A stretch of 63,986 nucleotides of DNA from Octopus bimaculoides. Its lineage: Eukaryota. This document shows positions 6,271 through 48,520 of the stretch, in pieces; positions within the stretch are counted from its first letter, which is position 1; every line of letters starts with the position of its first letter. The position numbers were made by a program, and so were the translations under genes. The notes below the pieces were generated by a model. The model was not told where the DNA came from, did no database searches, and was given only the letters and a program-made list of their open reading frames with translations. The stretch is from assembly GCF_001194135.2 (NCBI RefSeq), contig NC_068992.1, positions 36,707,702-36,771,687 on the forward strand, read 5' to 3'.

Positions 6271-6910
6271 AAGCGGTTCCCAACCTTTTTGTGATCGCGT
6301 ACCATTTGGAGGTTTCGTACAGCCGCCGCGTACCACCTGGTTTGATTTAATCACAATTAGAAAACACAAATGAACTAACAACAAAGAACACAACTCAGTT
6401 TAATACGTGGGCTTTATCTGTTTCTTCTCCACCAGCTGGTCCATGCGCGGCATAACTTTGCTCACAGCGCATCAGAAACCATGGCTGGGCGCAGAAAGAG
6501 TTCCGGCTCTTCGACTTTATGGCCAGTAAGGTTGAGAACCCCTGCTCAGATTCCCACATAGAGGGGGAAATTAGTAGCTGGGGAACTGCGTAACGGAGTG
6601 GTGTCGGGTGCGAGAAGGCCATATTTAGCCAGAAGTTTACAGGAGAGCATTCTTTGTACTTCGTCTTTGCTGTCTCGTCAACCTGGATACCTATGAGTTC
6701 CTCTTGTTCCCCGGTCCCGACAAGCAACTTGGCTGGATCAATGGAGAATGGATTGGCGATGGATTGGTGAGTGTCTCACACTGAGGATGGATAACATCCA
6801 GAAACCTATGTCTGTGAGTATCACGTAAGGCTATAGATGGGAGCGATGACCTCCCTTGCAAGTACTATATACGGACACAAACTGTGTCGGTAGCCAACTG
6901 GAAAAGATTT
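6271..6910 (-). mobile_element. hAT (Charlie/Buster-like) transposon 3' part: transposase C-terminal dimerization region + TIR
   Basis: ORF 6395-6727: GEQEELI..Q.DETAK...FW...LL..PS.WESEQGFSTLLAIKSKSRN; upstream ANPFSIDP; TIR AAGCGGTTCCCAACCTTTTT at 6271-6290 after palindromic CCTTAAGG. Left boundary (~6910) is approximate. Confidence 0.85.
6775..6818 (+). ncRNA. Minimal type I hammerhead ribozyme fold
   Basis: Stem I CUCACA/UGUGAG (6 bp), core CUGAGGA (6781-6787), stem II UGGAU-aac-AUCCA, GAAA (6801-6804), stem III AC-cuau-GU, GUC triplet (predicted cut after 6812). Confidence 0.75.
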
Positions 6911-6959: not shown

Positions 6960-7775
6960 ATCTTTTGGCATATAAACATTAAAAGATATTTACTATTTTT
7001 TGGAAAATATTTATCCAGTGCCGAATAGAACAATTTAGGAATGCTGGAAAGAATTTGCTTTCCGAAGGGAATTATATACCACTTGTCATTACTATTTATA
7101 TTTTTACTAGAGAAACTTTTATTATGGTTTTCTGCAGTTTTAGCTAACTACCTAGTAAAGGCATTTAACCTGTTTTTCTGTTTTTTATATTTAGTCCGTT
7201 TGGCGTCAGAATTGCTGTCTATTTGTGTAGTTCTCGTGGAGTGCTTTTCATAGCGGTTATCTCTTTTACCCGAGTGCGGCCTATTAATATTTCGGTTATT
7301 GTCTGAGTTACATAATATCTTATGCGGCCCTAATTCCTTAAAATAATCTTCATATTATCTGGTATTCCATGATTATTTTCCAATTGTTCGAACTTCCTAT
7401 CCTTATCACTCACTTTAATCCTAAGGTGGCTATTACTTGTCTTTTTTATCAAGATTATTGTTATTGTCCATCGTGTTCATTCCCGTTCGTAGTACAGGTG
7501 ACTATAAGGCCATTATTCCTATATAATCATGTATCTATAGAAAGAAATTCTAGATGCAAGTTGTGCAAAATGTAAGTTCCTATTAGCATGCTTAGTTTTG
7601 CTCCCTCGTACGTATCCATCGGCACATCGAATAAAGAATCTTCACTCTTTGTGACACAGGTGGAATCGTCGAAAAAATGTAGAGATTTCCTAGCATTCAA
7701 GATAATATCGATGGACTCAAGGAGAATCTTATCACTTTTTTGCAAATCTTATCACTTTCTTACAACTCACAATAG
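6960..7775 (-). mobile_element. Penelope-like element fragment: RT core plus post-RT linker, thumb region missing
   Basis: IILNARKSL...FDVPMDTYEGAKLS.LIGTYILH...LYRNNGL (YRDDG motif); near 6960-7090 WYIIPFGKQILSSIPKLFYSALDKYFPKNSKY, homologous to the PLE at ~57170-57250. Confidence 0.8.
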
Positions 7776-7777
7776 AT

Positions 7778-8675
7778 ATGAACGTGACTAGCGTAAACTT
7801 CTTAGACATTTGCTTAGATTTACAATTAAATAAATTTAAACCCTACCGTAAACCTAACGAAAAGCTATGCTATATCAATAAAGAGTCCAATCACCCACCT
7901 GTAATTCTAAATAATATAGTTGGCAATATAAGAAGGCACATATCATCAAGACCATCGGACGAGACATCGTTTCGAAATGCCGCGCCCTACAATATTAAGA
8001 AACATTGAATTCTCGAATATCCAATATAGCCATAACGAAACTAAACTTAATAAACCACGCTGGATTAGAACCAGGAAAGTTCTGTGGTTTAATCCAACTT
8101 TCAATATCGCCATAAAAGCTAATATAGGTAAAAGATTTTTAAACCTAGGAGAACGCTTAAAGGGAGCTATTCTTGTATGAACTTCACCTCTTTAATCAAC
8201 CAACATAACACAAAGACTATTAGTAAAGCCAACAATGCTGAAATAAATAACCAACCTAAATGCAACAGCAAAGACCAAAGTTAACGCCTCTAAGAAGGGA
8301 ATTGTCTAATGAAAGGCTAAAGTTCAAATGGACAATGCAGGTGCATATAAAACATACACAGGTGCTATGGAAAATTCCTTCAAAAACAGACTATATTCTC
8401 ATTGAAATTCCTTCAGATATCCAGAGAATAGAACTGTGATGAGTCTGGCCAAACATATATGGCAGTTAAGGGAAGGAGAGTCTTCTTTTAAAAGACTCTG
8501 GTCTACTCTGGAAAAAGCAGTCCCATACAGACACGGAGAGCACAGATTTTCAATGAGGCGTGGTTTATGCTTGAGCGAGAATTTTTTTATTCTCTTTCAG
8601 GAGAAAAACGTCTTAAATGAGAGATCAGAACTCTTGAACTGCTGTAGACACGCTTCCAAATATAAGATTAGTTGA
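7778..8675 (+). mobile_element. Penelope-like element (Poseidon-type) 3' half: thumb, linker, GIY-YIG region
   Basis: VNFLDICLDL...KPYRKPN...YINKESNHPP; RKVLWFNPTF...NIGKRFL; SLAKHIWQL...LCLSE..FILF...LNERSELLNCCRHASKY. 3' UTR probably extends to ~9340. Confidence 0.9.
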
Positions 8676-10149
8676 CAACAAAAATCCATACGAGTAAGAA
8701 ACATTGGTCTTTGGGTTTACTAAATTCGCTCAAATCTACCTACATCTATCGCATTTCACCTCGTATAACTTTTATTTTAATTCATTTTATTTCACCAACA
8801 AACAAACCCACGAAAAACCCTTCAACTATCTAGAAACTAATTCGTTAATACTTTTAGATGCATTCTACCGCCAACTACACTGAATTTTATCTGTGGCCTT
8901 TTGCCTACTGAATCTTTTAATTATAATTTAAGCGTATGTTCAGTAAAGAAAATCCATCATTTGTCCATTGTCCATGTAATTTTAAAGATAGCCAAAGTTT
9001 TCATTATTGCTATTCATTTATTTAATGGTTTTGTTGCATTGTTTTATTGATTTGCGTAACTTACCTAATCAAACACATGTAGTTAGACTTACAAGGCTTT
9101 AAAAAACCCACTGATTTATATTACGTAAAATAATGCATTTTTATTCTAATTTTATAATTTTATAATCTTAATTTAAATTTCATTTTGATTCCACTTATTT
9201 TAAAGTTTAATAACCGACACATTTTCTCTCCTAATTGCAAGCCTTTTTCGTTAACGAATGTTTTATTCCTTTATTTATAATGCCCTTATATAAATACTAG
9301 TGACGAAAGCACTCTCCTCTCGCAAATACTATATATCTTTTTTGAACATCACACAGTCGCTAATCTAGCTATGTATATTGTGTGGGCATGCGTATGTGTA
9401 CGTGCGTGCGCGCGCGTGTGTATGTGTGTGCTCGCGCGCGCGCATGCACGTGAAAATGCGTGTGTAGTTCTCGAAAGACATCCGAGAACACAACTCAAAG
9501 AAGAACTGTGTATATGGAAAAGTATATTTTTAAATGTTTATACATATGACTTATTAAAATAAGTCATATGGATTTTACTCACCCACACTAGAATGCAAAA
9601 GGATTGCTGGAAAACATTGTTAATAATAATAATGATAATAATAATAATATGACAATTCCCAATAATAACATAAAGAAAACAATTCAAGTGGCAACGAATT
9701 GCAAAATAACTAAAATCCAGAACAAGTGTAGCAACAGCAAAACCCAACAACTGCAAAACAACACGACAAACGAATGTGATATTAACAATAAATAAGCTAA
9801 CAATAAAAGCAGCTACAACAGAAGAGAAAAAAATCTGCCTCAGCAACACTGAATGCAAAAACAGAGTAACATCATCAACAACAAAAACTAAGGCTACAAG
9901 GGCAACAAAAGCATTATGGTGGCATGTTCCATTCCGGAAGACGATGACAGATAAGTCTAGAAAGTTCAACTGGTTTCCTGGTGGCTGGAAGCCCGAGGAA
10001 ATAATATTCAGACTTCAGGTTAAAACAAAGAAAAAATTATTTTCTTTTCTGGTTCTTTTATCAACTTACTTTTCAAACTGTAAGTTTACATGAAGTAAAG
10101 TTTAGAAACATTGGTTATGCATGTAATACTTATAAACTATGAAACACAA

Positions 10150-13916: not shown

Positions 13917-15721
13917 AGGACAGAACCTATAGGGAGGTTTAACAGAAAAAATCGCGTAAACGGATTATCGGTAAGAAAAAGTACGAACAAACCTCAAAGA
14001 AAATTTGTGTATGTAAAAATTAATAACACAAACGTAAAGTTACAATTGGATTCAGGCAGTGACATCTTAATAACTAACTAAATTAGATGAAACTTCGAAA
14101 ATTGCCTGTGGTGTTTCAGGAAAAAAATTATATTTTAAGGGCGAATTGATAACTAACATCAGATTTCGTGAAAAAACTTAAAAGCCAAAGCTTTTGTGTT
14201 AAACAATACCACAAATTTATTCGGTACTGACTGGATGGAATTACTTAACCTATGGGACCTCTCCATAAATCTTTTCTGTAAAAATGTGAATGGTTTTTCC
14301 TCCAGCAAAAAAAATGTCGTCAAACGAATTGAAAAGAAAAATTTTAAAGTCCTGTCTGATAAATTAGGACTGTGTACCAAAACGAAAGCGTGGTTTCAGA
14401 TTAAAGAAAACTTCATACCAGTATTTAAATAAAATACGAACTGTATCATTCGCAGCGTTATAACAGATAGATAGAGAGAGAGATTAGAAAAAATTGAAGC
14501 TATCCAAAAAGTGGAATATAGTCAATGGGCATCACCAACTGTGTACATTAATAAAAAAAGATAATAAAATCAGAGTGTGTGCTGATTTCTCCACTGGTTT
14601 AAACGAATGTCTTAAAACGTGCCACTATCTGCTACCTACTCCAGATGATATTTTTGCGAAATTAAACGGCAGCAAGATATTTTCTAAATTGGATCTCTCT
14701 GTCGCGTACCTAAAAATTAGAGTAGACGATGAATGCTCTAAATATCTAACAATTAACAAACATATAGGATTGTATAAATACAACAGGTTATCATTTGGCT
14801 TAAAAGTCGCACCAACGTCTTTTCAACAGATTATGGATGCAATGTTAGCGGACTGAATTCGCAATTCCATATCATTAAAAGCGAATGTGTATTCGAAAAA
14901 ATTAGGGACTACGGCTTTACTTTGAGTGAAGAAAAGTGTGAACTTTTCTTACCGAAATAAGATATTTAAGACAAATCATTGACAGAAATGGACGTCGTGC
15001 ATCCCCGTTGAGGGAAGACGCAATTAAAAATATGCCCCCTCCGACAAATATAGCGATTTTACAAGCATTTTTGGGAGTGTCACATTATTACCGAAATTAT
15101 ATTTTAAATATGCACAATGTGAGGGTTCCACTGAATAATCTGCTCAAAAAAGGTATGAAATGGAATTGGTCGGAAAATTGTCAAAAGGCCTTTGAAGAAA
15201 TAAAAAAAATATTAATATCTGATTTGTCGTTATCACACTTTGATCCTGCAGCGGAGGTTGTAATAGCTTTAGACGCGTCTGAGTACGGTATAGGAGCAGT
15301 AATGCTACATAAATATAAAGATGGTAACATGAAAGCGATGGTTCATGCCTCACTTTCTCTGATATCAGCTGAGAAAAATTATAGCCAAATTGAAAAAGAA
15401 GCTTTAGCGATCATTTTTGCCATAAAAAGATTTCACAGATTTTTACACGGAAGAAGTTTTCGTCTACAGACTAATCATCATCCGTTATTATCGATATTTG
15501 GGTCGAAAAGGGAATCCCTTCCATACTGCTAATCGATTGCAACACTGGATATTATTAAACTATGATTTCAAGATGGAGTATATATCATCCAAGAAGTTTA
15601 GCTCATGCTGATTGTCTATCATGATTGATTTTAAGAAATGCTGAACTATTGGGAGATACTGTGATTGATGTTTTGCGAGCGGAAGATGAAATTTAAAATG
15701 TTTTGTGTAACGTCATTCGTG

Positions 15722-21441: not shown

Positions 21442-24400
21442 TGGGGTCGGTTAGACTGAGGGTGGGAGTAGAGGTGGGTATGTGGGTTAGGCTGAGGGTG
21501 TGGGCAGAGGTGGGGTATGTGGGAATGGGGGTAAGGGATGGGATAGGGTGGTATGGATAGCGAAGGTGGGGTTGGATTGTGTAGGAGTAGGGTTACGAGG
21601 GTGGGGTGATGATAAAGGGAGAGGGGAAGGGAGAATGTGGGTAAGAGTGAAGAGAAGAGAGAAGGAGAGTAGGCGTGAAGAGAGGAAATAGGAGTCGGAG
21701 CAAGAGAGGAGAGGTGGGAGGGAGCAAGTAGGTGTGAGAGGGAGAAAGGAGAGGGAAGGAGGAGAGTTGAGCCCATGTGGCGCAAAAGAGCGAAGAGACG
21801 ATTAATCCCTGTTCACGCGAAAACGGGAGTGCAGATGGGCCCTGTGCAAGGACATTCCGAACAAAGACAGGTGTTGCAAAGAGTTACCGGTAGAGCGGAA
21901 ATGGCGCGAGACCGGGGTGTCATTGCCGAGTCGGATGTCTCGGTTTTCTGCGAACAGGTCAGCCAAGCGGCGTCCCGTTTGCCCTATGTATAGAGAAGGG
22001 CAGAGAGAGCAAGAGATGCAGTAGATGACACTGGTAGAAGTGCGGGTGAAGGAGTCGGTGATATGATAGGGTTGATGATGGGTGCCGGTGAGAAGGGTGG
22101 TGTTGGAGAGGTAAGGGCAAGTGCGGAATCGTGGGAGGGAGCAAGGGAACGAGCCGGGTTGGGAGGTTGGGTTAGGGAAGAAGCTGCTGACCAAGAGGTC
22201 TTGTGGGTTTTGGGCTCGTTTGAAGGAAGAGAGGGGTCGGACTGGAGTCGCTAGAAGGTTCGGAGAATGGGGTGTTGGAGAGGTAGAGTGGTGGTGTGGT
22301 AGCTGAGGGGAAACGGAGAGTGAGACGGTGGGACGGGTGTGGGGGAGATAGCAGATGCACAGTCCACGGAACGTGCTCTGGCAAGGGCGGTGTGGATAGT
22401 GGTGAAGAGATATCCACGTAGGATGAAGTGGTGAGCCATGAATTTCGACTGTCTCAAAGTCATGATCGTCACTGCAGAATCTGTATAGACAGAGGAATTG
22501 GAAATAGGGGATGGAAAGCTTAGTGTGTTTAGTGTGGAAGGAGGAGAAGTTGAGGTATGAATGTGAGTCTGTGTGTTTATAGTGGATGGAGGTGGTGAGA
22601 GTGGAGTGATGAATGCTGACCGAAAGGTCAAGAAAGGAGACAGAGGTGTCAGAGATAGTGCAGAAGAAGCAGAGGGCAGGATGGAAAGATTTGACAAAAG
22701 AGAGGAAGGCTTCTAGATGGTCACGGGAGAGTGAGGTCGCACCGATACATTCGTCAATAAAATGGCCATATAGTTCGGGAGTGGGACCAGTGAAACTTGA
22801 GAATATTTGGGCCTCAACGTAACCAACGAACAGGTTCGCATAGTTGGGGCCCAGTTCTCTTTCCCATGGCCACTCCCGCGAACTGCTGGTAAATATTACC
22901 AGAGAACGAGAAGCAGTGGAGTGAAAGGACAAGTTCGGCCAGAGGAACGAATGTGGATGTGTCGGNNNNNNNNNNNNNNNNNNNNNNNNNNNNNNNNNNN
23001 NNNNNNNNNNNNNNNNNNNNNNNNNNNNNNNNNNNNNNNNNNNNNNNNNNNNNNNNNNNNNNNNNNNNNNNNNNNNNNNNNNNNNNNNNNNNNNNNNNNN
23101 NNNNNNNNNNNNNNNNNNNNNNNNNNNNNNNNNNNNNNNNNNNNNNNNNNNNNNNNNNNNNNNNNNNNNNNNNNNNNNNNNNNNNNNNNNNNNNNNNNNN
23201 NNNNNNNNNNNNNNNNNNNNNNNNNNNNNNNNNNNNNNNNNNNNNNNNNNNNNNNNNNNNNNNNNNNNNNNNNNNNNNNNNNNNNNNNNNNNNNNNNNNN
23301 NNNNNNNNNNNNNNNNNNNNNNNNNNNNNNNNNNNNNNNNNNNNNNNNNNNNNNNNNNNNNNNNNNNNNNNNNNNNNNNNNNNNNNNNNNNNNNNNNNNG
23401 AGGAGATGAGGTCATGGATAGTGGGGGACACAGTTTGTTGGTAGCTGGGCGTGGGGTCAGAGGGCAGAGGGCAGCAGAAGGAGGTGTCTTGAAGTTAGCG
23501 GAGAGTTTCCGCCCTGTAGAGGTCTGCGCGCCACACTACCATGGCACCACCCTTGTCGGCCAGTTTTATGATGATGTCAGTGCGACGTCGGAGACATCAA
23601 AGGGCCGACAGCTTGGCTGGAGAGATGTTCATTGACGGGGACGCCTGGAAAAGTTAAACCGGTCCACTGGGATGGTCGGCGGCCCTCGTCGATAAAGCAG
23701 TCCTCCTCATTAGACGCAGGAGGAGTGTTGCGAAAAAGCGCACACAACCTAACACGGCGCACAAAGCTGTGGATATCCGCACGAGTCTGAAATATGTTGC
23801 TGGATGGAGTGAGGGTGATGAAGAGCAGGCCCCTACTGAGGAGGGAGCGCTCAGCCTCAGAGAAGGGAAGATCTGGAGAAATGGTAACAGACTGAAGTGG
23901 AGAAGGCGTGGATGGGAAAGAAATAGAAGGGGTGGATGGGATAGAAGTAGGAGAGGTGGACAGGATAGAAGTCGGAGGGGTGGTGGGGATGGTGGAAGGC
24001 TGGAAGGGACGGGGGCGTTGGTGAGGGTAGGATGAGCGTATCAGGGAGGGAGAGGGGTAGTGGAGGAGTCGGGGTAGTGACAACGGGTGTGATGGAATGA
24101 AGGAGTGAATGGAGTTTACGTTGTTTGGTGTGAGTGAGAAATTGATGAAAGAGATGATTAAAATGAATTATGTAACGTAACGTAGTGTTTGCATGGGAGG
24201 GCGACTGAGAAGAGAAGAAGATGGAAAAAGCAAGAGGGAGAAGACAGTCGATGGTGTGTATTTTAGAGAGATTAGAACGAATGGTGGCGCCCATAAGCCG
24301 GTAGAATGTAGAACGGAGTATGGGTAGGAGTGTTGTAGCAGAGTGGTGTGTGGGGTGGAAATGGAGGCGGAAACCTTTAGGAATGAGGCGGTGATGCAAG

Positions 24401-34948: not shown

Positions 34949-36191
34949 TTGGGTTGGCAACTGAGTACACGCCATTTTTTTTTAATTTAAATTTTTTAAA
35001 CGGCTTAATAAAAAATAACAACTAATTAATCAATAATGTATTCACCCTTGTTGTTTACAACTTCTTCCCAACGTTTAACAAGATCTTCAATACTCGTTGG
35101 TAGAAATCACCCGATTTCGACACGAAAAATTGATCCAACCTAGCTCTCAATTCTGCATCAGTATTGAACGAAACTCCGCGCATAGCATTTGAAGAGATCG
35201 AAAGAGGTGGAAATCCGATGGTGCAAAATCAGGAGAGTACGGCGGGTGTAGCTGCACTTCCCAGCCATACGTTTGAATAGCTTCCTTGGTCATATTGGCG
35301 ATATGAGGGCGGACGTTGTCGTACAGCAGAAGAACTCCATGCTGCCGATTAGGTCTTTTCTCTTGAATAGCCATGTTGAGTCGTTCCATCTGTTGAACAT
35401 AGAGTTCAGTGTTGACCGTTTGGTTCCATTCAAGCAATTCGTAATGGATAATCCCTTCCCAGTTCCATCATACGCACAACATCGTTTTACGCGGATGAAG
35501 ATCTTGTTTCAATGCGCAGTGTCACTTGTTTACCGGGGCTAAGCCATTCCTTACGCTGCTTTATATTGAAGTACAGGCACCATTTTTCGTCACCAGTAAT
35601 GATTCGGTAAAGAAATCTTTGCTTGTGTCCATGGGTTGAGCGGTGACGAGTAAGCAAACCAGCGGAGATTGTGGCTCGTTGATTTTTGTTGTTGTCACTT
35701 AAAGCATGCGGAATCCATACTCTATGCTTCTGAACCTTTCCCATCGAGTGAAGATGCTTCTCTGTGACAGTGTGGGAGCATTCCATTTTCTCTGCCAGTT
35801 CCTTTGTCGTGCAAAAGTTGGTTTAATCGCTCTTCCTCGAACTCAACTGCAAGGCCAGAACGAAGTGCGTCTTTGAGGTCAAAATTTCCATTTTTGAACT
35901 TGGCATACCAAGTTTCTTTCAGCTATGGCACCCTCTCCATACACAGCAAAAATGTTACGAACAGCTTTTGCGGCGTTAGAACCTTCATTAAAAACAAATA
36001 CTCGTTTTTCTTAACTTGACAGTCCTTTTTAATGATCTGAAAATAAAAAATTAACTAAAATTAACTAGAAAAAAAAATAGATTCCAAAACGATTCAAAAA
36101 TAGAATTCTCGAAAAAAATAGTTTCCAAAATTTAAAACTCAATAAATACCAAAATTTAAAAAAAAGGGCGGGAACTTAGCTGCCAATCCAA
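34949..36191 (-). mobile_element. Mariner (DD34D) transposon, full length, frameshifted transposase
   Basis: Imperfect TIRs TTGGGTTGGCAACTGAGT... and ...ACTTAGCTGCCAATCCAA flanked by TA (34947-48, 36192-93); motifs WIPHAL, ITGDEKW, LLYDNVRPH, YSPDFAPSDFHLFRSL. Confidence 0.95.
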
Positions 36192-36329: not shown

Positions 36330-37400
36330 CCCCTCACTAAAATGAGACCCCACTTGCGAGATCAACTGGTTATCAGGTTTCGCTCAATATTCTTCTAACC
36401 ATTACTCATCGTCTCATTTTAACCAAACACAGTGGTCTGCCTTTTCCACGGTAGTCTGGATATCACTCATAGTGGTATTTGCTTTACGATAACAACAATC
36501 GCCTCACACTGTGCCCAACGAATCCTCTACATCCGACTTCGATTGGAAAATACTCCACTTTCCAGCCTGCGTCTTCACATTCCTCCAGGAAGTTTTTATA
36601 ACGGTCAATCATTCGAGCCCGAGAGGCGTCCATGCTATCTTCATGAGGAACCGTTAACTCCGCTAGATTAACTACTTTTTTTCACACCATATTATGATAT
36701 CCGGTTTCTTCCCAACTGGAATGTGAAAAAAATCCTTGGCACCCTGGTAAATCTGCAGCCACCTCTTAATAGCTGTTCCACTTTTAATCGCTCACCGAAA
36801 GTTTCTTCTTCTTCAAACGGATTTGCTGTCCTGAGCGCACGAAGGTAATGACATCCCTGCTTGGTTCTTTCAGTGGATTTTTGCCACTGTCCACGAGAGC
36901 AATTTGGTTCTTATAGCGTTGAAGATAACCTTAAGGACCAGATTGTGTCTCCATGTATACTTATTCAATGCCAGTGAACAGTTGGAGATAACATGTTTCA
37001 GTGTTCCAACTTTTTCGCATCTGCACATATCATTTTCTGATACGTTCCACCTTAATAGGTTTGTAGGCATCGTAGAATGAACCAGAAAATTTAGACGTGG
37101 CGTCGTCCACTTCCATATTTCATTCCAACTTATTTTTCTTGAAACAACGTGTTCTTCCATTTCGTGATTCTGTCCTTGTTGGGAGCATTGAATCAAATGA
37201 AGCGGTCTTCTCTCTGATTCCCTTCTTTTGACGCTATTACTAACAACAGATCTGCATTGTTTTGACATCATGCTTGCAAACGGTTGAGTCGATCTGAGCC
37301 AACTCCAAGTCCCTTCCAACGAATTTGCGTTGCACCCACCATATCTCGGTGTGTAAGTGAAGACAGAATGACATCAGGGTCTGTTTCAGCTTTCCAGTTA
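36330..37400 (-). mobile_element. HERO-like (RLE-type) LINE 3' part
   Basis: CRCEKVGTLKHVISNC...YTWRHNLVL (CCHC); KPDIIIW...ELTVPHED...YK...EC...GW...FPI(E)VGCRGFVG (RLE). Confidence 0.8.
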
Positions 37401-38819: not shown

Positions 38820-39012
38820 GTTATTCTTTTACTTGTTTCAGTCATTTTAACTGTGTCCATGCTGGAGCACCGCCTTTAATCGAACAAGACTTATTCTTTG
38901 TAAGCCTAGTACTTATTCTAACGCATTTCATGTCGAACCGCTAAGTTACGGGTACATAAACGCACCAAGATCTATTGTCAAGCGATGGCGGTAGGACAAA
39001 TACAGACACACA
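38820..39012 (-). mobile_element. SINE 3' half
   Basis: Minus strand ...CCATCGCTTGACAA...CTTAGCGGTTCG...AATAAGTACTAGGCTTACAAAGAATAAG...AAAGGCGGTGCTCCAGCATGG...GACTGAAACAAGTAAAAGAATAA; its start overlaps the end of the 4812-4958 fragment. Confidence 0.75.
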
Positions 39013-40430
39013 AGGCAATTACTTCCTATTCGATGCAACATACTATCGCCAAAAATGCGTTATTGCAATGGGAACGAAAGCAGCGCCTGTCCTTGCGAAC
39101 CTAACAATGGGTTTCTTTGAATCTACCCTATATGAACTTTCGCTCCAAAAATTTGGACCCCCATTCCACCAGTATATAAGAGAAAACTGGAAAAGGTACC
39201 CAGAGGATTGTTTTATTATCTGGAATGAAACCTATGATAAACTCCTGGATTTCAAATCCACACTAAACAATATAAACTCCAATATTCAATTTACAATGGA
39301 ATATAGCAAGGAACAGCTCTCATTTCTAGACATTTTGATTATAAAAACTACAACAACCAAATTGCAACTGACATTTACTACAAACCAACAGACTCGAAGC
39401 AGTATCTCCTTTTCAGTTCATGCCATCCTAAACACACCAAAATAAATATCCCATTCAATCTAGCAAAAAGGATCTGTACAATTGTATCTGACACAATCAC
39501 TCGGGAACTTCGCCTACAAGACCTCAAAATAACACTCCTTGAACGTCAATACCCACCCGCACTTATAGACCATGGAATTACACGTGCCAAGAAATTGGAC
39601 ACGAACACACTAAGGACAAAAAACAAAACACCACACCTCACTTTAAATCACTCCCATACATATCAACCCACAACCCCAGAAACAATGAAGCATACAACAC
39701 AATTATACAAAATCTCCTTCTGCTTAATCAAGACCCGAAAATGAACAACATCATAAATGCAAAAGACAACACAAATCACTCAAGAGACTCCTAACAAATG
39801 CAAAACTATACTCAATACATACGATACCAACAGTTAAAAAATGCAGACGACCTAATTGTGGTTCATGCCCATACCTAACTGAAGGCTCGGAGTTCACATT
39901 CCAGCAAGGAGAAAAATTCTCAATTAAGACCAAATTCACATGTGCTTCCCAGAACTTTATCTCTCTTCTAACCTGCTCAGGTTGTGGCCACAATTATGTG
40001 GGCCAAACGAGTCTTACTTTGAGACGCAGAGTCACGCTGCATAAAGAACAGATTCGTTTTCCTTAAAACAGGCAGATAGCCCTGAGCGAACATATCGACA
40101 GATGCCCAAGAAACAAAACGCCGAATTTTCATATCTTTCCATTATACCAATGCAAAGATTCAATCTCCTTATAAGAACGCCTAAACAAGGAAAATTTGTT
40201 CATACAAAGGTACAGACCACACCTTAATATACAAACTTGACCACTACAAAAATTATTCTGAGGAGTTAGTTGTTCCCCTCGCCACCTGTTGCCTCCCTTG
40301 GTCCACTCTTTAGACTCATTCTTATTTTTCAAGCGTCCAAAATGGAGATACCCCTTTGTCACAAGGATTGATTACGTCACAATGTCCATTGAAAAGCTAA
40401 TTTAAATAGCGAAAACCGGTTGGATATCTC
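39013..40430 (+). mobile_element. Penelope-like element (Neptune-type), 5'-truncated: RT core, linker, GIY-YIG, 3' end
   Basis: YRQKCVIAMGTKAAPVLANL; WKRYPEDCF (YIDD decayed); SFLDI; KCRRPNCGSC; NFISLLTCSGCGHNYVGQT. Confidence 0.92.
40382..40427 (+). ncRNA. Degenerate minimal hammerhead-like motif at PLE 3' end
   Basis: AUGUCCA-UUGAAAA-GCUA(auuuaaa)UAGC-GAAA-ACCGGU-UGGAUAU; stems I and II intact, core altered, one-nucleotide register anomaly. Confidence 0.45.
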
Positions 40431-40632
40431 GACATCCATAAAATATGTATATATATTTTTTAAATTCTTTATAAAAAGATATTAAACTATGTGAAACGAA
40501 GGCATTTCTATTCCACTTTTTATGTTTTCCACATATTTTCAACTCATAATTTTGCCACGTGGTTTATACTGAATGTCCAGTATTTTCGCTCCTTTTATAT
40601 TTTTATATTTATATACATATATATATATATAT

Positions 40633-40808
40633 ATACGCACACACGTGACAAGTTTCTTTCAATCTACTTATGCCAAATCCACTCACAAGGCTTTGGTCGG
40701 CCCAAGACCATAGTAAAAGGCACTTGCCCAAGGTGACATGCAGTGGGACTGAACTCAGAACCATATGACTGGGAAGCAAGCTTCTTACCACACAGCCACG
40801 CCTCCGCC
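40633..40808 (-). mobile_element. tRNA-derived SINE (head + body)
   Basis: GGCGGAGGCGTGGCTGTGTGGTAAG (A box) ... GAGTTCAGTCCC (B box) ... CACCTTGGGCAAG ... GGGCCGACCAAAGCC. Confidence 0.88.
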
Positions 40809-40816
40809 TATATATA

Positions 40817-41069
40817 AATTTATAATCAGGGTACAAGATAGTACACAGCATTGCTAGAAATAAGAGTCAAAACTGCTCAAGATCACAGTTATCACTAATA
40901 CAAACTCGTGAATGCGAGGAAACGAGTAAATATAATGCCAACTTACCAAATAGCGATTAAAATCTCAAATAAATAAATTTGCAGACATACTCGTATCAAG
41001 TGATTTCGAACCATGTGATAAACACCTAATTCTCATCAGCGAATATTACTGCCGTGGGCTAAAGATACT
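40817..41069 (-). repeat. Hammerhead-bearing ~250-bp repeat, copy 1
   Basis: Aligns by eye along its length with 41347-41582 and, inverted, with 41722-41954. Confidence 0.9.
40981..41052 (-). ncRNA. Type I hammerhead ribozyme fold (copy 1)
   Basis: Stem I AUAUUCG/CGAGUAU plus distal GCAG/CUGC; CUGAUGA (41039-41033); stem II GAA..GUG-uuuau-CAC..UUC; GAAA (41007-41004); stem III AUC-acuu-GAU; AUA triplet, predicted cut between 40994 and 40993. Confidence 0.85.
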
Positions 41070-41307
41070 TTGACCATTTTTAAAGTTTTCTATGTAAATA
41101 TAGAAACCTCACTCAGTGATTTCCTTCCCAATAATTTTGTACCATTTTATGTGAGCCCTTGTGGTTGCCGGACAAAAAGCTTAGCGGTATTTTGTCTGTC
41201 TTCACTTAGGCTCACTTCAATTCGGTCAAGCCTTGCATTCACTTCTGTCAAGTCTTGCATTCTCTTCTGTCAAGCGTGTATCCACCTACATTTATCCACC
41301 TTTCGGA

Positions 41308-41590
41308 GCTAGTAAGCATAAAATAACCATAAAGGTAACAATTATTAATTTATAATCAGAGTACAACATAGAACACAGCATTGTTAGAAATAAAAATCAA
41401 ACGGCTCAAAATCAGTTATCACTAATGCACGCTGGTGAATTCGAGGAAACGAATAAATATAAAGCCAATTTACCAAATAGCGATTGGAATGACAAATAAA
41501 TAAATTTACAGCCGTATTCGTATCACGGGATTTCGAACCCTGATATAAACAGTTCTCATCAGCGAATATTACTGCCGTGTGCTTGCTAGC
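41308..41590 (-). repeat. Hammerhead-bearing repeat, copy 2 (bounded by 10-bp inverted repeats)
   Basis: Core homology 41347-41582; GCTAGTAAGC (41308-41317) and GCTTGCTAGC (41581-41590) are 9/10 complementary. Confidence 0.88.
41508..41575 (-). ncRNA. Type I hammerhead ribozyme fold (copy 2)
   Basis: Stem I UAUUCG/CGAAUA; CUGAUGA (41562-41556); stem II GAAC..GUUC; GAAA (41534-41531); stem III AUC-ccgu-GAU; AUA triplet, predicted cut between 41521 and 41520. Confidence 0.85.
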
Positions 41591-41721
41591 CACTTATACT
41601 ATTGTTATTATTTCTTTTATTAATGATAATATATTTTATATATTTTAATAATTTTATTGACTTCCATCATTTTTTGAATTTGCCGCGGTATTCAAATGAT
41701 CAATACACACATGGTGACACG

Positions 41722-41992
41722 AGTATCTTTAGCTCACGTCAGTAATATTCGCTGATGAGAACGAAGTGTTTATCACAGGGTTCGAAATCACATGATATAA
41801 GTACGTCTGAAAATTTATGTATTTGCGATTTCAATCGTTATTTGGTAAGATGTCTATATATTTACCTCGTTTCCTCGAGTTCACGAGTGTGTATTAGTGA
41901 TAACTGTGGTCTTGAGCCGTTTTGACTCTTAATTCTTATACCCTCATTATAAATAAATATTTTTAAAATTCATGGTTAATTTAAGCTTGCTA
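41722..41992 (+). repeat. Hammerhead-bearing repeat, copy 3 (inverted, internal deletion)
   Basis: Reverse complement of copies 1 and 2; homology to the copy-2 flank extends to GGTTAATTTAAGCTTGCTAGC at ~41992. Confidence 0.88.
41739..41810 (+). ncRNA. Type I hammerhead fold (copy 3), stem I weakened
   Basis: CUGAUGA 41752-41758; GAAC..GUG-uuuau-CAC..GUUC; GAAA 41784-41787; AUC-acau-GAU-A (predicted cut after 41797); the 3' strand of stem I (UAAGUAC) has mismatches next to the core. Confidence 0.7.
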
Positions 41993-42018
41993 GCCACTTA
42001 TATTATTATTATTTTTAT

Positions 42019-42064
<46 letters not shown>

Positions 42065-42370
42065 NNNNNNNNNNNNNNNNNNNNNNNNNNNNNNNNNNNN
42101 NNNNNNNNNNNNNNNNNNNNNNNNNNNNNNNNNNNNNNNNNNNNNNNNNNNNNNNNNNNNNNNNNNNNNNNNNNNNNNNNNNNNNNNNNNNNNNNNNNNN
42201 NNNNNNNNNNNNNNNNNNNNNNNNNNNNNNNNNNNNNNNNNNNNNNNNNNNNNNNNNNNNNNNNNNNNNNNNNNNNNNNNNNNNNNNNNNNNNNNNNNNN
42301 NNNNNNNNNNNNNNNNNNNNNNNNNNNNNNNNNNNNNNNNNNNNNNNNNNNNNNNGTATCCGACAGAGTA

Positions 42371-42652
42371 AAGGGAATGAAGTTTATCTGTATATATCTT
42401 CATCAAAGAAGCGGGAAATACTATATTCTTGGGAATAGAAATTTCCCTTATGAATTTTTTTTACACACTGGCTTCTTGATAAAATTCTTGTAAAAGAGTT
42501 TTATCCATTTTTGAATTTATTTATCAAATATATACACGGAATATATTCAATGTTGAATTTTTATTCCTGTCTCCACATGGGTACCCAAAAACAACCGGGA
42601 AGTATTTCCCGCTTCTTTGATGGAGATATATACAGATAAACTTCATTCCCTT
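42371..42652. mobile_element. MITE with 52-bp terminal inverted repeats
   Basis: 42371-42422 vs reverse complement of 42601-42652: 51/52 identical; ~180-bp AT-rich non-coding spacer; target-site duplication unclear. Confidence 0.85.
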
Positions 42653-42654
42653 AG

Positions 42655-43185
42655 GGCATCCCTAACCTACCTTTTAACGGTTCTTGGCAGCAGACAAGTG
42701 GCTTTCCTTCTTTCCACAATAAGCGGAAGACGAGGTGCTCCAACTTGTTTAGTCACGAGTCGGGGCAAGGGACAACGGTTAGGTGGTAGGTGATTATAGA
42801 TGCAATAAACACCTGAACCACCTCTGCCCTTCCTTTCAGAGACAGATCCCGTCCGGACCAAGTCAGGACTAGGGCCTGCACCCTGATTGTCACCTCGCTC
42901 CAATTTTTCTCTGTCTGGGAGTCCGGTCCAAACCGAGCTCCAAGCAACTTAACAGGACCATATGTCCAGTGACCAACGACACTGGATGATATAGACTTGC
43001 TCGTCCAGGCGGAATACTGTAAAGGACCGATTATACCAACGGAGGTCAAAGAGGTGTTGGCCGAGTGCGCCGGGGAGACGTCGCCGGGGCTGGATGGTCT
43101 TCCCTATGAGTTTTATCGTAGCATGCCAGACTTGTTCGGGGACCTGCTAGCAGGCGTCTACACAAACTGGCAACAGAATGGGAGT
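42655..43185. mobile_element. L1/Tx1-clade LINE fragments in back-to-back orientation
   Basis: Minus: GHWTYGPVKLLGARFGPD...LSLKGRAEV (thumb). Plus: CKGPIIPTEV...SPGLDGLPYEFY (pre-RT). Switch near 42965-42995. Confidence 0.8.
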
Positions 43186-43204
43186 GATGACGCTGATCTA
43201 GAAG

Positions 43205-43466
43205 GGCCCGAGCAAGGGGGACATAACTTTATGGCTATGATGCTCCCCCACTACTTCTGCTCGTGATCAGAAATGCATACATCGTCAGCCACCAAGGGAC
43301 ATGCTCAACTGGTTACGGTCAAACAACTAACAAGCAAAATCTGTGGAATTAAGCAGAATATTTGTTGTAGCCCATCTTTTTAAACCAAGACAAAACAATG
43401 TGCATGATAATACTTCCAATCAATTAAGATCAGAAGCCATGAGAGCCACTGCCCTGTACTGCATCA
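43205..43466 (-). mobile_element. (TAA)n-associated non-coding repeat, 5' part
   Basis: Homologous to 43945-44105 and 52020-52240; starts immediately after the (AAT)n run at 43467-43547. Confidence 0.8.
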
Positions 43467-46649: not shown

Positions 46650-48520
46650 ATTCTTGTTGTTATGCATGATTTGAAAAGTATTGCTAAGAATCCATCGGAG
46701 CCAGCAGCTGAGTTTGCGTCTCCCTCATCTATAGCCAGTATTACATCCTCTTCTTTGATGTTGATGAATTTAATTGTTACTGCCTCCATTTTTACATCTG
46801 TAGTGACAAAGGGTTCTATAGGTCCGCTGATTGCATGTGCCGTATGTGTGGTGTAAAGACACAAAGGCAGTTTCTTTGGCATACTTAAAGAAGGCTTTAA
46901 CATGTGATTTTAATTTATTGTAACCCAGGCTTCTTTTCCTGTAGAGCTTTCTCTTCTTTTTCATGGGAGCATTTCGGATGTTTCTCCATCTCCCGCAGTG
47001 CTGTTTCCAGGCAGGATTTTCCACTGCCATTTAATTCTTTGTTGACACAGTTTACAATTCTTTGTACACCGTATCAATTAAACTTTTCTCTCCCTGAGAG
47101 TCTTGCTCTTTTATACAGTAGCCTTTCTCATTGGGACAATCTTGTAGCATATGGCTTGCATTACCAACATGAATTCTTTGAATTTCATGTCCGTGTCAGG
47201 TGTAGACAGACATCGGCGCCAATCCTGTTTCATAATCTCTATCTCAATTGATTTCCAGTATGCTTTATGGAAGTTCAGGCTGCATGTCTGCTGGTTCATT
47301 TGGTCCATACATGGTAGAGTCTACTATATTGTCATCCGAGACTAGTGTCAGTGTCACTTTCACATTATGGATGAGATCCATATTGTTTGTGAAGCAGAGA
47401 TCAAATATATTGCTTGTCCTGGTTGGTTAGAGTAGTACTTGTTTCATGTATAACTTGGTGAGGTTCAGCGGGGATTTCCCCTGACTTTGTTCACATCGAT
47501 TCATTTCTGAGACGAAGATGCCCCCAGGCCATCCTAACTGGGCAGGTTGATGTCTCTCATGAGAAGTACACAGATGTATTGCTGTATCTTGGTTAAGATT
47601 TCTTCTACTCTTGCAAGGCAGTCTTCCAATAGGCCCGGGTGATCTGCAACACCCAGTGGGTGATAAGTAGTACATATAACTATATCGAGTGGTCTTATAT
47701 GTACAATTAGTGCGTCACACATCGAGTTTGAGTGGGCAAGGATCTGGGGCGTAAGACCTTCACGGATGTACATTGCAACTCCACCATGACTAATGTCTTT
47801 TCTATCGCTTCGCAGTACAATATACTCTGGTTCGTGTATTTCTGCATCTGCGATGTCGGGTTCTAGATGCCTTTCAGTGAGCGCTATGCATAAAGCTTGA
47901 TTGCATGCTGCGAGGGATTTCAGGGAGGGAATTTTGGTTCTGTTACTGAGTTGTAAGAGGCCTCTGATGTTCACAAAGTATATTGATGTGACATCTGTGC
48001 TGATGCCAGTGATGGCCTGCCTGAGTCCATTGGTTGTGACGGTCTTGTATGTTGGCGGGGATAGTTCCAACGCTGAAATCGATGTAGTCAGGTTATTTGC
48101 TGTACAATCTTTTGCGCCATGCATAAAAAAGATTGTCAGCCCTTATGATGGCATCTAGATAGGGCTGGCTGTTGGAGGTAATGCGCACTACATCGACATA
48201 TTTTCGTTTGGTTGCAGGCGATGCGCGACTTTTTCCCCTTTGAAGTCTTTCTTTATCTTTTGCTCCCTATCGAGGTAAGCTTTTGTCCTGCCTGTGGCAT
48301 GGTTTTGGGTGTAGGAAGCAGCAGTTTGTGCCGTCATCTCCATACCAGCAGACACTGCACAGGTAGAATTTACACTTGTGTGCGCTCCTTAACTATTTGT
48401 ACCTTCACGTATGGGCTGTCTAACTTGTTTCTTTTCTTAGTTGTTTTACTCGGGGCCTGTCTTTTGCTTTTTCTTCATTTACTGTTCCTTTTACGTTTTT
48501 TTCCTTTTTTAGCGCTTTAA
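46650..48520 (-). mobile_element. CR1/L2/Jockey-group LINE 5' part: Cys/His-rich ORF1 remnant, APE endonuclease, start of RT
   Basis: IYFVNIRGL...CIALTE.HL...RSDR...GGVAMYI...DINLP (APE); DVILAIDE...SAAGSDG (pre-RT SPGPDG motif); CKFY..C.YG....C.FLHPKPC upstream. Confidence 0.82.

What the first reader, a model, noticed from the sequence alone, without database searches (positions are those of the whole stretch)
40817..41590. Retrozyme-like element: two direct ~250-bp repeats, each with a canonical type I hammerhead, 527 nt apart
Seen: copies 1 and 2 both fold into complete hammerheads (CUGAUGA, GAAA, AUC/GAU stem III, AUA triplet). Differences between copies fall in loops or keep pairing (U-G in copy 1 versus U-A in copy 2 of stem I), which suggests selection on structure. 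The repeats flank a ~275-bp unique non-coding spacer. Cleavage at both sites on a minus-strand transcript would release exactly 41520-40994 (527 nt). Established: hammerhead-bearing repeats in animals (schistosome Sm-alpha, newt satellite 2, metazoan retrozymes) self-process into monomers that can circularise. Inference: this may be an undescribed cephalopod ribozyme retroelement; the repeat-spacer-repeat layout resembles plant LTR retrozymes more than the simple tandem animal type. A Penelope element, a proposed mobiliser of animal retrozymes, ends ~400 bp away.
Basis: partly seen in the sequence, partly recalled or inferred. Interest (0 to 1): 0.88.

Follow-up and report, generated by a model that had tools for sequence, protein, structure and literature searches.

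The report
Decayed hammerhead-ribozyme retroelement cluster, Penelope-style insertion

Summary
Copy 1 (40813-41077) and copy 2 (41308-41580) are about 85% identical. Each carries a complete type I hammerhead (HHR) on the minus strand. The predicted cuts are exactly 527 nt apart (41521/41520 and 40994/40993). A strict descriptor finds both; about 0.003 hits per window are expected by chance.

It lies head-to-head with copy 2, and its helix I is damaged. The layout is a head-to-tail partial tandem, an inverted 5'-truncated copy, a 32-nt repeated "tail", and (TA)n on both sides. This is the published insertion signature of Penelope-like elements (PLEs), not of LTR elements. There is no PBS, PPT, type III HHR or high GC.

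The cluster has no coding remnant, so it best fits an animal non-LTR retrozyme, that is, a non-autonomous PLE derivative.

The HHR is no better conserved than the rest of the repeat, and covariation is not significant with three copies. Copies differ by 12-16%, so this locus looks like a relic.

Rfam models do not reach threshold. No other copy was found in the window or in any searchable collection, so copy number, tandemness and expression stay untested. Verdict: a new member of a known kind, of modest interest.

The parts
40813..41077 (-). Copy 1 of the repeat, the downstream unit on the sense (minus) strand. 40813-41060 aligns with copy 2 and 40856-41077 with copy 3. It lacks the last ~45 nt of the unit and abuts the SINE-like sequence.
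40981..41056 (-). Hammerhead 1, the best preserved. Helix I is 7 bp + 2x2 internal loop + 4 bp. Core CUGAUGA. Helix II is 6 bp + mismatch + 3 bp. GAAA. Helix III is 3 bp + ACUU loop. AUA triplet. Predicted cut between 40994 and 40993.
   Evidence: The HHR fold is -17.7 kcal/mol against an MFE of -20.4. The MFE keeps helices I and II.
41078..41307 (-). Spacer seen only once. No coding similarity. Contains a 22-nt tandem duplication at 41216-41259. It is either the 5' part of a ~530-545-nt unit or unrelated filler.
41308..41580 (-). Copy 2, the upstream unit. It is 5'-truncated exactly at the outer edge of HHR helix I and runs to the unit's 3' end (GCTAGC at 41308), as shown by homology with copy 3.
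41508..41579 (-). Hammerhead 2. The core is intact. Helix I is 6 bp + loop + 5 bp. Helix II is shortened by a 4-nt deletion. Loop 3 is CCGU. Predicted cut between 41521 and 41520. The HHR fold is thermodynamically disfavoured.
   Evidence: The HHR fold is -9.4 kcal/mol against an MFE of -16.3.
41581..41612 (+). 32-nt 'tail': a second copy of the junction found at the 3' end of copy 3 (GCTTGCTAGC + CACTTATAYTATT...). It lies against the 5' end of copy 2.
   Evidence: family D8, 91% identity with 41985-42016
41613..41710 (.). AT-rich linker between the two head-to-head copies. No homology to the unit.
41711..41994 (+). Copy 3, inverted relative to copies 1 and 2, head-to-head with copy 2. It starts ~22 nt upstream of the HHR and runs to the unit's 3' end (GCTAGC, 41994). 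It has a 20-nt internal deletion.
   Evidence: (I1-I3, I5)
41735..41810 (+). Hammerhead 3. The core is intact (CTGATGA at 41752, GAAA at 41784). The two helix I pairs next to the cleavage site are damaged (G.U and C.A, a CG-to-TA change). It fails the strict descriptor.
   Evidence: The HHR fold is -6.9 kcal/mol against an MFE of -13.8.
41985..42016 (+). Right-hand copy of the 32-nt junction repeat: the last 10 nt of copy 3 plus 22 nt of flank.
   Evidence: D8
42017..42064 (.). (TA)n microsatellite on the right flank. It runs into an assembly gap (N, 42065-42355).
40596..40640 (.). (TA)n-rich microsatellite on the left, separated from copy 1 by the SINE-like sequence.
40641..40812 (-). tRNA-derived SINE-like sequence, with box A-like TGGCTGTGTGGT and box B-like GGTTCTGAGTTCAGTCC. 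It is not part of the repeated unit. The assignment is by eye only.
   Evidence: sequence. ARAGORN finds no tRNA.
38975..40240 (+). Degraded, 5'-truncated Penelope-like element: RT C-terminal half, CX4CXXC linker and GIY-YIG, with a frameshift and stops. It is on the opposite strand to HHR 1 and 2 and shares no sequence with the repeat.
   Evidence: RT is 57% identical to a Mytilus RT protein. GIY-YIG PF01541 scores 20.3 bits, E 7e-4, below the 22.6 cut-off. control.

Best explanation
The locus is a cluster of three partial copies of one non-coding retroelement that carries a hammerhead ribozyme. That is an animal 'non-LTR retrozyme', meaning a non-autonomous derivative of Penelope-like elements (PLEs). 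It was inserted into a (TA)n microsatellite by PLE-type machinery (RT plus GIY-YIG nickase) and has been decaying since.

On the sense (minus) strand the order is: inverted 5'-truncated copy 3, a 32-nt tail, 5'-truncated copy 2 (a pseudo-LTR), then spacer plus copy 1.

The working cycle of an active family member is inferred from established retrozyme work, not shown here:
1. Read-through transcription of at least two head-to-tail units.
2. HHR self-cleavage after the AUA triplet. The weak 3-bp helix III probably needs help from pairing between two HHRs. The three-copy consensus of helix III, AUCACGUGAU, is a perfect palindrome.
3. [quoted passage not shown]
4. Circularisation by a host RtcB-type ligase.
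5. Reverse transcription and nick-primed integration by a PLE enzyme. This step produces tandem and inverted partial copies.

At this locus, HHR 1 looks competent, HHR 2 is weakened and HHR 3 is probably dead. Release of the 527-nt RNA is therefore possible but likely inefficient.
For: - The HHR motif is far beyond chance: two strict hits against 0.003 expected per window.
- All core positions are intact in all three copies. The geometry matches the published canonical metazoan type I HHR: helix I 6-7 bp then a loop, helix II 4 bp then a loop, G10.1-C11.1, GAAAY/RUH (PMC4209133; supplement of PMC7229834).
- The architecture has a head-to-tail offset of 527 nt, a head-to-head inverted copy, a 32-nt junction repeat, and (TA)n on both sides. 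This equals the PLE signature in PMC8557442: 5' truncation, partial tandems forming pLTRs, an adjacent inverted 5'-truncated copy, a 30-40-bp tail and (TA)n targets.
- A real PLE fetched here (L003) shows the same head-to-head layout, with an HHR in each arm.
- There is no coding remnant. Pfam finds nothing. tblastn with 124 PLE proteins finds nothing better than E~0.09, while PLE1-3 in the same window are hit down to 1e-80.
- GC is low, 0.34-0.38.
- The window holds at least three PLE remnants.
- Published work places animal retrozymes as PLE-mobilised or PLE-derived (PMC7229834, PMC7761336, bioRxiv 10.64898/2026.07.22.740005).
Against: - Only one locus is available. There is no other copy in the window or in the metagenome, prokaryote-genome or viral collections, so 'family', copy number and true unit length are unproven.
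- The spacer is seen once, so a 527-nt monomer is not demonstrated.
- Rfam hammerhead models do not reach threshold.
- There is no statistical sign of selection on the HHR.
- The 527-nt RNA folds no better than shuffles, z = -0.5, whereas published retrozyme circles are described as highly self-paired.
- The repeat shares no sequence with any PLE remnant in the window.
- The assembly is gapped next to the cluster.
Confidence: 0.65

Rival explanations
1. The three copies are 5'-truncated 3' ends (pseudo-LTR fragments) of an autonomous Penelope-like element family, not a separate non-autonomous retrozyme. The 'spacer' would then be the PLE 3' UTR upstream of the HHR.
For: The same tandem/inverted/tail/(TA)n architecture applies. 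PMC4209133 reports dual HHRs 100-700 bp apart on opposite strands as probable truncated PLEs. The window is PLE-rich. PLE HHRs lie near the 3' end, about 100 nt after the ORF in L003.
Against: The HHR is the canonical type, with helix III and no bulged base between A9 and G10.1. It is not the minimal HHR typical of animal PLEs, such as the L003 example CUGACGA-A-GGGC...GAAACGUC (PMC4209133, PMC7229834). The 230 nt upstream of HHR 1 show no GIY-YIG or RT similarity. There is no sequence similarity to the 3' regions of PLE1-3 in the window.
Confidence: 0.2
2. Local DNA-level duplication and inversion (replication slippage or template switching in an AT-rich microsatellite) of a single old hammerhead-bearing insertion. 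On this reading the repeat layout says nothing about retrotransposition.
For: All three copies are adjacent, with none elsewhere in 64 kb. The pairwise distances are roughly star-like, at 12-16%. Private changes number 8, 16 and 14 in copies 1, 2 and 3, counted by hand from the variable columns listed, and are compatible with one origin (my chi-square on those counts gives p about 0.25). Microsatellite surroundings favour slippage.
Against: The junctions are specific. Copy 2 ends at the same 3' terminus (GCTAGC) as copy 3. The 32-nt tail duplicates an element-end/flank junction. The combination is the documented PLE pattern and is reproduced in L003.
Confidence: 0.1
3. A plant-type LTR retrozyme layout (LTR-spacer-LTR).
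For: Two ~250-bp direct repeats with HHRs flank a ~270-bp non-coding stretch.
Against: The HHR is type I, not type III. There is no tRNA-Met PBS after the upstream repeat and no polypurine tract before the downstream repeat; the only purine runs are 9-10 nt and lie internally. GC is 0.36, against >0.55. There is no 4-bp TSD and no TG..CA termini (definitions in PMC7761336). The third inverted copy and the tail do not fit an LTR element.
Confidence: 0.02
4. The motif is a hammerhead look-alike with no ribozyme activity, conserved only because the copies are related by descent.
For: No Rfam hammerhead model reaches threshold. There is no excess conservation or significant covariation. Single-copy MFE z-scores are unremarkable, -1.4 to +0.5.
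Against: The chance expectation for the full descriptor is 0.003 per window. The helix lengths and core match the published canonical type I geometry, including G10.1-C11.1, GAAAY/RUH and a palindromic helix III. The context is exactly where such ribozymes are known to live.
Confidence: 0.05

Closest known systems
Metazoan non-LTR retrozymes (Cervera & de la Pena 2020, PMC7229834; for example the Mytilus galloprovincialis ~350-390-bp repeats)
   Same: Canonical type I HHR with a weak, palindromic helix III. One HHR per head-to-tail unit. Non-coding, with low GC. No LTR, PBS or PPT. Co-occurs with PLEs. The best PLE-RT protein match in the window is also a mollusc.
   Different: Only 1.5 head-to-tail units plus an inverted copy are visible. 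The 527-nt HHR spacing is above the 150-450 bp first described, though inside the 51-972 bp range of the 2026 preprint. Helix II is unusually long at 21-25 nt, with an internal loop. The predicted monomer is not unusually self-paired. Expression and circles are untested.
Pseudo-LTRs of Penelope-like elements with hammerheads (PMC4209133, PMC8557442)
   Same: Partial tandem, adjacent inverted 5'-truncated copy, ~30-nt tail, (TA)n target, and an HHR within a few hundred nt of the 3' end.
   Different: There is no RT/GIY-YIG ORF or remnant between or beside the repeats. The HHR is canonical, not the minimal PLE variant. There is no sequence similarity to the PLE remnants in the window.
Schistosome Sm-alpha and newt satellite 2 hammerhead repeats
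   Same: Type I HHR in a short non-coding interspersed or tandem repeat. A short helix III favours double-hammerhead action.
   Different: No sequence similarity beyond the core was looked for or found. Copy number here is unknown. Sm-alpha is SINE-like with Pol III features, which were not seen in this unit.
Plant LTR retrozymes (PMC4918200)
   Same: Two HHR-bearing direct repeats flank a non-coding stretch, and double cleavage would give a ~0.5-kb RNA.
   Different: Plant elements have type III HHRs, PBS, PPT, 4-bp TSDs and high GC, and are mobilised by Ty3/Gypsy. None of these features was found here.

Membership tests
Hammerhead ribozyme, type I | Conserved core CUGANGA ... GAAA, A15.1-U16.1 pair, H17 not G | tested here: met
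   Invariant in all three copies. The cleavage triplet is AUA.
Hammerhead ribozyme, type I | Three helices around the core, with helix I open (5' and 3' ends in helix I) | tested here: met
   Copies 1 and 2 pass a strict descriptor. 92% of pair cells are standard pairs. Copy 3 fails in helix I (G.U plus C.A next to the cleavage site).
Hammerhead ribozyme, type I | Score at or above the gathering threshold of a curated Rfam hammerhead covariance model | tested here: not met
   No hit at gathering or at E<=10 on 1.5 kb. There is only RAGATH-1-hammerhead at 17.0 and 18.2 bits against a 56.3-bit gathering score. The long helix II probably costs score, which is inference.
Hammerhead ribozyme, type I | Site-specific self-cleavage in Mg2+ | not testable with these tools
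   Needs in vitro transcription.
Metazoan non-LTR retrozyme | Canonical type I HHR (helix I ~6 bp, helix II ~4 bp before the loops, short palindromic helix III) | tested here: met
   Definition in PMC4209133.
Metazoan non-LTR retrozyme | Head-to-tail tandem units, one HHR each, from dimers to multimers | tested here: inconclusive
   Two HHRs lie 527 nt apart in direct orientation. The 230-nt spacer is seen only once, so a true 527-nt monomer is unproven.
Metazoan non-LTR retrozyme | Non-coding, GC below ~45-50%, no LTR/PBS/PPT | tested here: met
   GC is 0.34-0.38 and no PBS or PPT was found. No Pfam or PLE-protein similarity.
Metazoan non-LTR retrozyme | Multi-copy family dispersed in the host genome | not testable with these tools
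   No host-genome collection is available. None found elsewhere in the window or in the metagenome, prokaryote or viral collections. Spurious-ORF search was empty.
Metazoan non-LTR retrozyme | Expressed as unit-length linear and circular RNA | not testable with these tools
   Needs RNA data.
Penelope-like element (autonomous) | Single ORF with RT and GIY-YIG endonuclease inside the element | tested here: not met
   No coding similarity in 40600-42064. The positive controls PLE1-3 were hit.
Penelope-like element (insertion architecture) | 5' truncation, partial tandem (pLTR), adjacent inverted 5'-truncated copy, 30-40-bp tail, microsatellite target | tested here: met
   Definitions in PMC8557442. 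The comparator L003 has 604-nt inverted arms, each with an HHR.
Penelope-like element (HHR type) | Minimal HHR: helix III absent or minimal, extra nucleotide between A9 and G10.1, short helix I | tested here: not met
   Here helix III is 3 bp plus a tetraloop, there is no bulge, and helix I is 6-7 bp plus 4 bp.
Plant LTR retrozyme | Type III HHR in ~350-bp LTRs; tRNA-Met PBS; PPT; 4-bp TSD; GC >55% | tested here: not met
   Type I HHR, no PBS or PPT, GC 0.36, and flanks are a 32-nt repeat and (TA)n.

The most novel reading that the evidence does not exclude
The cluster is a relic of a still-active retrozyme family in this (reportedly cephalopod) genome. The family would have an unusually long ~0.5-kb monomer and a hammerhead with an extended helix II. 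It would make abundant circular RNAs and be inserted by Neptune-like PLE enzymes at (TA)n sites. This locus would then be direct architectural evidence that PLE machinery integrates retrozymes. Separately, the 687-bp copy 2/copy 3 palindrome could feed a small-RNA pathway when transcribed.
Probability: 0.15. Interest if true: 0.5.

Novelty: new member of a known kind. Interest (0 to 1): 0.3.

Why it matters
Hammerhead-bearing repeats are a known and widespread source of small circular RNAs in animals, including molluscs, so one more instance is not surprising. This locus adds an insertion architecture: tandem plus inverted partial copies, a tail, and a (TA)n target. That architecture ties a canonical-type hammerhead repeat with no coding capacity to Penelope-style integration. 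It supports the current view that animal retrozymes are non-autonomous riders or derivatives of PLEs. If the family proved abundant and expressed in the host, it would extend retrozyme circRNA biology to that lineage.

Tried and rejected
- Rfam at gathering and at permissive E-values, on the whole window and on short pieces, gave no hammerhead family above threshold. It also gave nothing for the second candidate at 6773-6818.
- I looked for other copies by self-BLAST of the window. I also ran an exact-pattern scan of the metagenome, prokaryote-genome and viral collections. The single hit, L001, is a chance match inside a 64%-GC bacterial coding region.
- I tried to reach host or transcriptome contigs through a spurious 69-aa ORF across copy 2. 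There were no candidates.
- An exact look-up of a 196-aa window ORF to identify the source contig returned nothing on record.
- The PLE1 RT query returned 4 proteins, none from a cephalopod.
- The PLE2 query returned 349 PLE proteins. The two loci fetched (L002, L003) come from unrelated organisms and share nothing with the repeat. They served only as a PLE architecture comparator.
- The covariation and conservation tests lack power with three related copies and came out non-significant. Zero changes in ~13 core columns is expected about 6% of the time at the observed 19% column variability, which is my calculation.
- Folding of the 527-nt RNA showed no excess stability.
- A PBS/PPT/LTR-terminus check was negative.
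- ARAGORN did not support the SINE head as a tRNA.
- A supplement search of PMC7229834 for cephalopod names found none.

Full report
**1. The observation**

The region was read directly. Two direct repeats are present, 40813-41060 and 41343-41583. They are 84% identical over 248 nt, with register offsets of 523-530 nt caused by small indels. The pattern CTGATGA-N10-40-GAAA occurs three times in the 64-kb window, and all three matches lie in this cluster.

I wrote a strict type I hammerhead descriptor. It requires:
- helix I of at least 5 consecutive pairs next to the core;
- CUGANGA;
- a helix II hairpin of at least 3 bp;
- GAAA;
- helix III of at least 3 bp including A15.1-U16.1;
- H17 not G.

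It returns exactly two hits, both on the minus strand, with H17 at 41521 and 40994. 300 simulated windows with the same dinucleotide statistics gave a mean of 0.003 hits.

**2.

A third copy lies at 41711-41994 on the + strand. It is inverted relative to the other two and 88% identical to copy 1. It changes how the layout reads.

- Copy 3 shares about 22 nt upstream of the hammerhead with copy 1 (ATGGTSA..AGTATCTTTAGC).
- It shares 35 nt past the old repeat border with copy 2, up to GCTAGC at 41994 and 41308.
- Only 41078-41307 (230 nt) is therefore truly seen once.
- Copy 2 starts at 41580, exactly at the outer edge of its hammerhead helix I.
- Directly against that edge lies a 32-nt segment (41581-41612). 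It repeats the junction at the 3' end of copy 3 (41985-42016, 91% identity, family D8).
- Copies 2 and 3 lie head-to-head and form a 687-bp imperfect palindrome (41308-41994). This explains the weak plant-miRNA-precursor matches in Rfam.
- The cluster is bounded on the right by (TA)n (42017-42064) and then an assembly gap.
- On the left is a tRNA-SINE-like sequence (40641-40812, by eye only; ARAGORN is negative), followed by (TA)n (40596-40640).

**3. Hammerhead anatomy**

All three copies keep CUGAUGA, G10.1-C11.1, GAAA, A15.1-U16.1 and the AUA triplet.

| Feature | Shared design |
|---|---|
| Helix I | 6-7 bp, then an internal loop, then a 4-5-bp closing stem |
| Helix II | 4 bp, then an internal loop or bulge, then 2-3 bp (21-25 nt in all) |
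| Helix III | 3 bp with a tetraloop |

This is the canonical metazoan type I geometry of PMC4209133 (helix I ~6 bp, helix II ~4 bp before the loops, short palindromic helix III). It also meets the CUGANGA / GAAAY / RUH rule used in PMC7229834.

The consensus of helix III plus its loop is AUCACNUGAU. With G at N, as in copy 2, it is a perfect palindrome, and two such sequences would pair at -12.9 kcal/mol. The present copies pair at only -3 to -5. Double-hammerhead action is the likely original design and has decayed at this locus; this is inference.

| Copy | HHR fold (kcal/mol) | MFE (kcal/mol) | Note |
|---|---|---|---|
| 1 | -17.7 | -20.4 | MFE keeps helices I and II |
| 2 | -9.4 | -16.3 | A-to-C change in loop 3 creates a competing helix with the GGG of helix II |
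| 3 | -6.9 | -13.8 | G.U and C.A at the two helix I pairs next to the cleavage site (CG to TA) |

Rfam does not recognise any copy at its thresholds. The only hammerhead match is RAGATH-1-hammerhead at 17-18 bits, which aligns the same helices.

**4. Selection**

- Between copies the hammerhead is 86-87% identical, against 84-88% for the rest of the repeat.
- On the hammerhead structure, 92% of cells pair. There is one double-sided change (pair 5-76: G-C, G-U, U-A) and a few one-sided ones.
- 163 of 500 shuffles do as well.
- With 19% of columns variable, no change in about 13 core columns is expected roughly 6% of the time (my calculation).
- Several differences are CpG-type transitions.
- Private changes number 8, 16 and 14 in copies 1, 2 and 3 (counted by hand from the variable columns). 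This is compatible with a single origin followed by neutral decay.

It is not excluded either.

**5. Coding capacity and LTR features**

- No ORF in the cluster hits Pfam.
- tblastn with 124 PLE proteins gives nothing better than E~0.09 on 40600-42064. The same proteins hit the three PLE remnants in the window at E down to 1e-80.
- GC is 0.34-0.38.
- There is no tRNA-complementary PBS after copy 2, no polypurine tract before copy 1, no TG..CA termini and no 4-bp TSD.

**6. Surroundings**

- PLE1 (38975-40240, + strand) is a degraded, 5'-truncated Penelope-like element.
  - Its RT half is 57% identical to a Mytilus RT protein.
  - It has a CX4CXXC linker.
  - It has a GIY-YIG domain at 20.3 bits.
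  - It lies on the opposite strand to hammerheads 1 and 2, shares no sequence with the repeat, and ends towards the same (TA)n tract.
- PLE2 (21802-24400, minus strand) has 349 homologues with RT, HTH_animal and GIY-YIG domains.
- PLE3 remnants lie near 7400-8700.
- One fetched PLE locus, L003, shows a minimal hammerhead about 100 nt after the ORF. It also has a perfectly inverted 604-nt 5'-truncated copy carrying the same hammerhead. That is the same head-to-head layout as copies 2 and 3 here, but with the PLE-type minimal ribozyme rather than the canonical type.

**7. Interpretation**

Four features occur together: a head-to-tail partial tandem, an adjacent inverted 5'-truncated copy, a ~30-nt tail and a (TA)n target. 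This is the published signature of PLE integration (PMC8557442). A canonical type I hammerhead in a non-coding, low-GC unit is the published signature of animal non-LTR retrozymes (PMC7229834, PMC7761336). A 2026 preprint argues that these retrozymes are non-autonomous PLE derivatives.

The best reading is a decayed retrozyme-type element integrated by PLE machinery. The main rival cannot be excluded without the host genome: that these are 5'-truncated 3' ends of an autonomous PLE. The plant-LTR-retrozyme comparison fails on every defining feature tested.

**8. Limits**

- No collection available here contains the host genome or transcriptome.
- Copy number, true monomer length, association with a particular PLE, expression, cleavage and circularisation are all untested.
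- In the held literature, 'retrozyme' and a cephalopod term co-occur only in passing in PMC8557442. 'Hammerhead ribozyme' with 'octopus' returned five papers, none describing a cephalopod hammerhead.

Noticed in passing
window 6773-6818 (+): A second, unrelated solitary type I hammerhead candidate: GTCTCACA CTGAGGA TGGAT-AAC-ATCCA GAAA CCTATGT C|TGTGAGT. Helix I is 6 bp, helix II is 5 bp plus a triloop, helix III is 2 bp plus CUAU, with a GUC triplet and a cut after 6811. None of 150 simulated windows gave a hit at these stem lengths, but Rfam gives nothing at E<=10. It lies next to an ORF that looks hAT-like by eye (6395-6727, minus) and ~600 nt upstream of a PLE-like remnant.
   Followed up: partly
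window 21802-24400 (-): A second Penelope-like element with a long ORF interrupted by an assembly gap: RT C-terminal half plus GIY-YIG (VIYCISCSLCPSLYIGQTGRRL). It has 349 homologues, the best at 43% identity over 99% of the query. No hammerhead was found downstream, but a 710-nt N gap begins ~360 nt after the ORF.
   Followed up: partly
window ~7400-8700 (+): A third, weak PLE-like remnant. tblastn hits to PLE proteins reach E 7e-6, and the ORF fragments resemble the RT thumb and EN C-terminus.
   Followed up: partly
window 40641-40812 (-): A tRNA-derived SINE-like sequence with box A/B-like motifs and a GT/TA-rich tail. It sits between copy 1 and the left (TA)n tract and may have removed the last ~45 nt of copy 1. 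ARAGORN finds no tRNA, so the assignment is by eye only.
   Followed up: partly
window 42371-42422 and 42601-42652: 52-nt inverted repeat arms, 98% complementary and 178 nt apart, just right of the assembly gap. This may be a MITE-like or hairpin element (I4).
   Followed up: no
window 41308-41994: Copies 2 and 3 form a 687-bp imperfect palindrome. A read-through transcript would fold into a long hairpin. Rfam plant-miRNA-precursor models match it weakly (MIR2655, 38 bits against a 122-bit gathering score), which reflects the hairpin and is not a miRNA assignment.
   Followed up: partly
window 35147-35786 (-), 36870-37319 (-), 42997-43266 (+), 47534-48124 (-), 15008-15532 (+): Other transposon remnants, judged by eye from ORF translations: mariner-like transposase, LINE RT C-terminus, LINE RT N-terminus, LINE endonuclease-like ORF, and Ty3/gypsy RT-RNase H. 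The window is almost entirely repeats, with eight N gaps.
   Followed up: no
L003 9197-9800 and 10709-11312: In an unrelated ENA contig, a PLE has a 604-nt, 100% identical inverted 5'-truncated copy. Each arm carries a minimal hammerhead (CUGACGA-A-GGGCUAACGCUC-GAAACGUC). This is a recent insertion and a clean example of the PLE architecture.
   Followed up: partly
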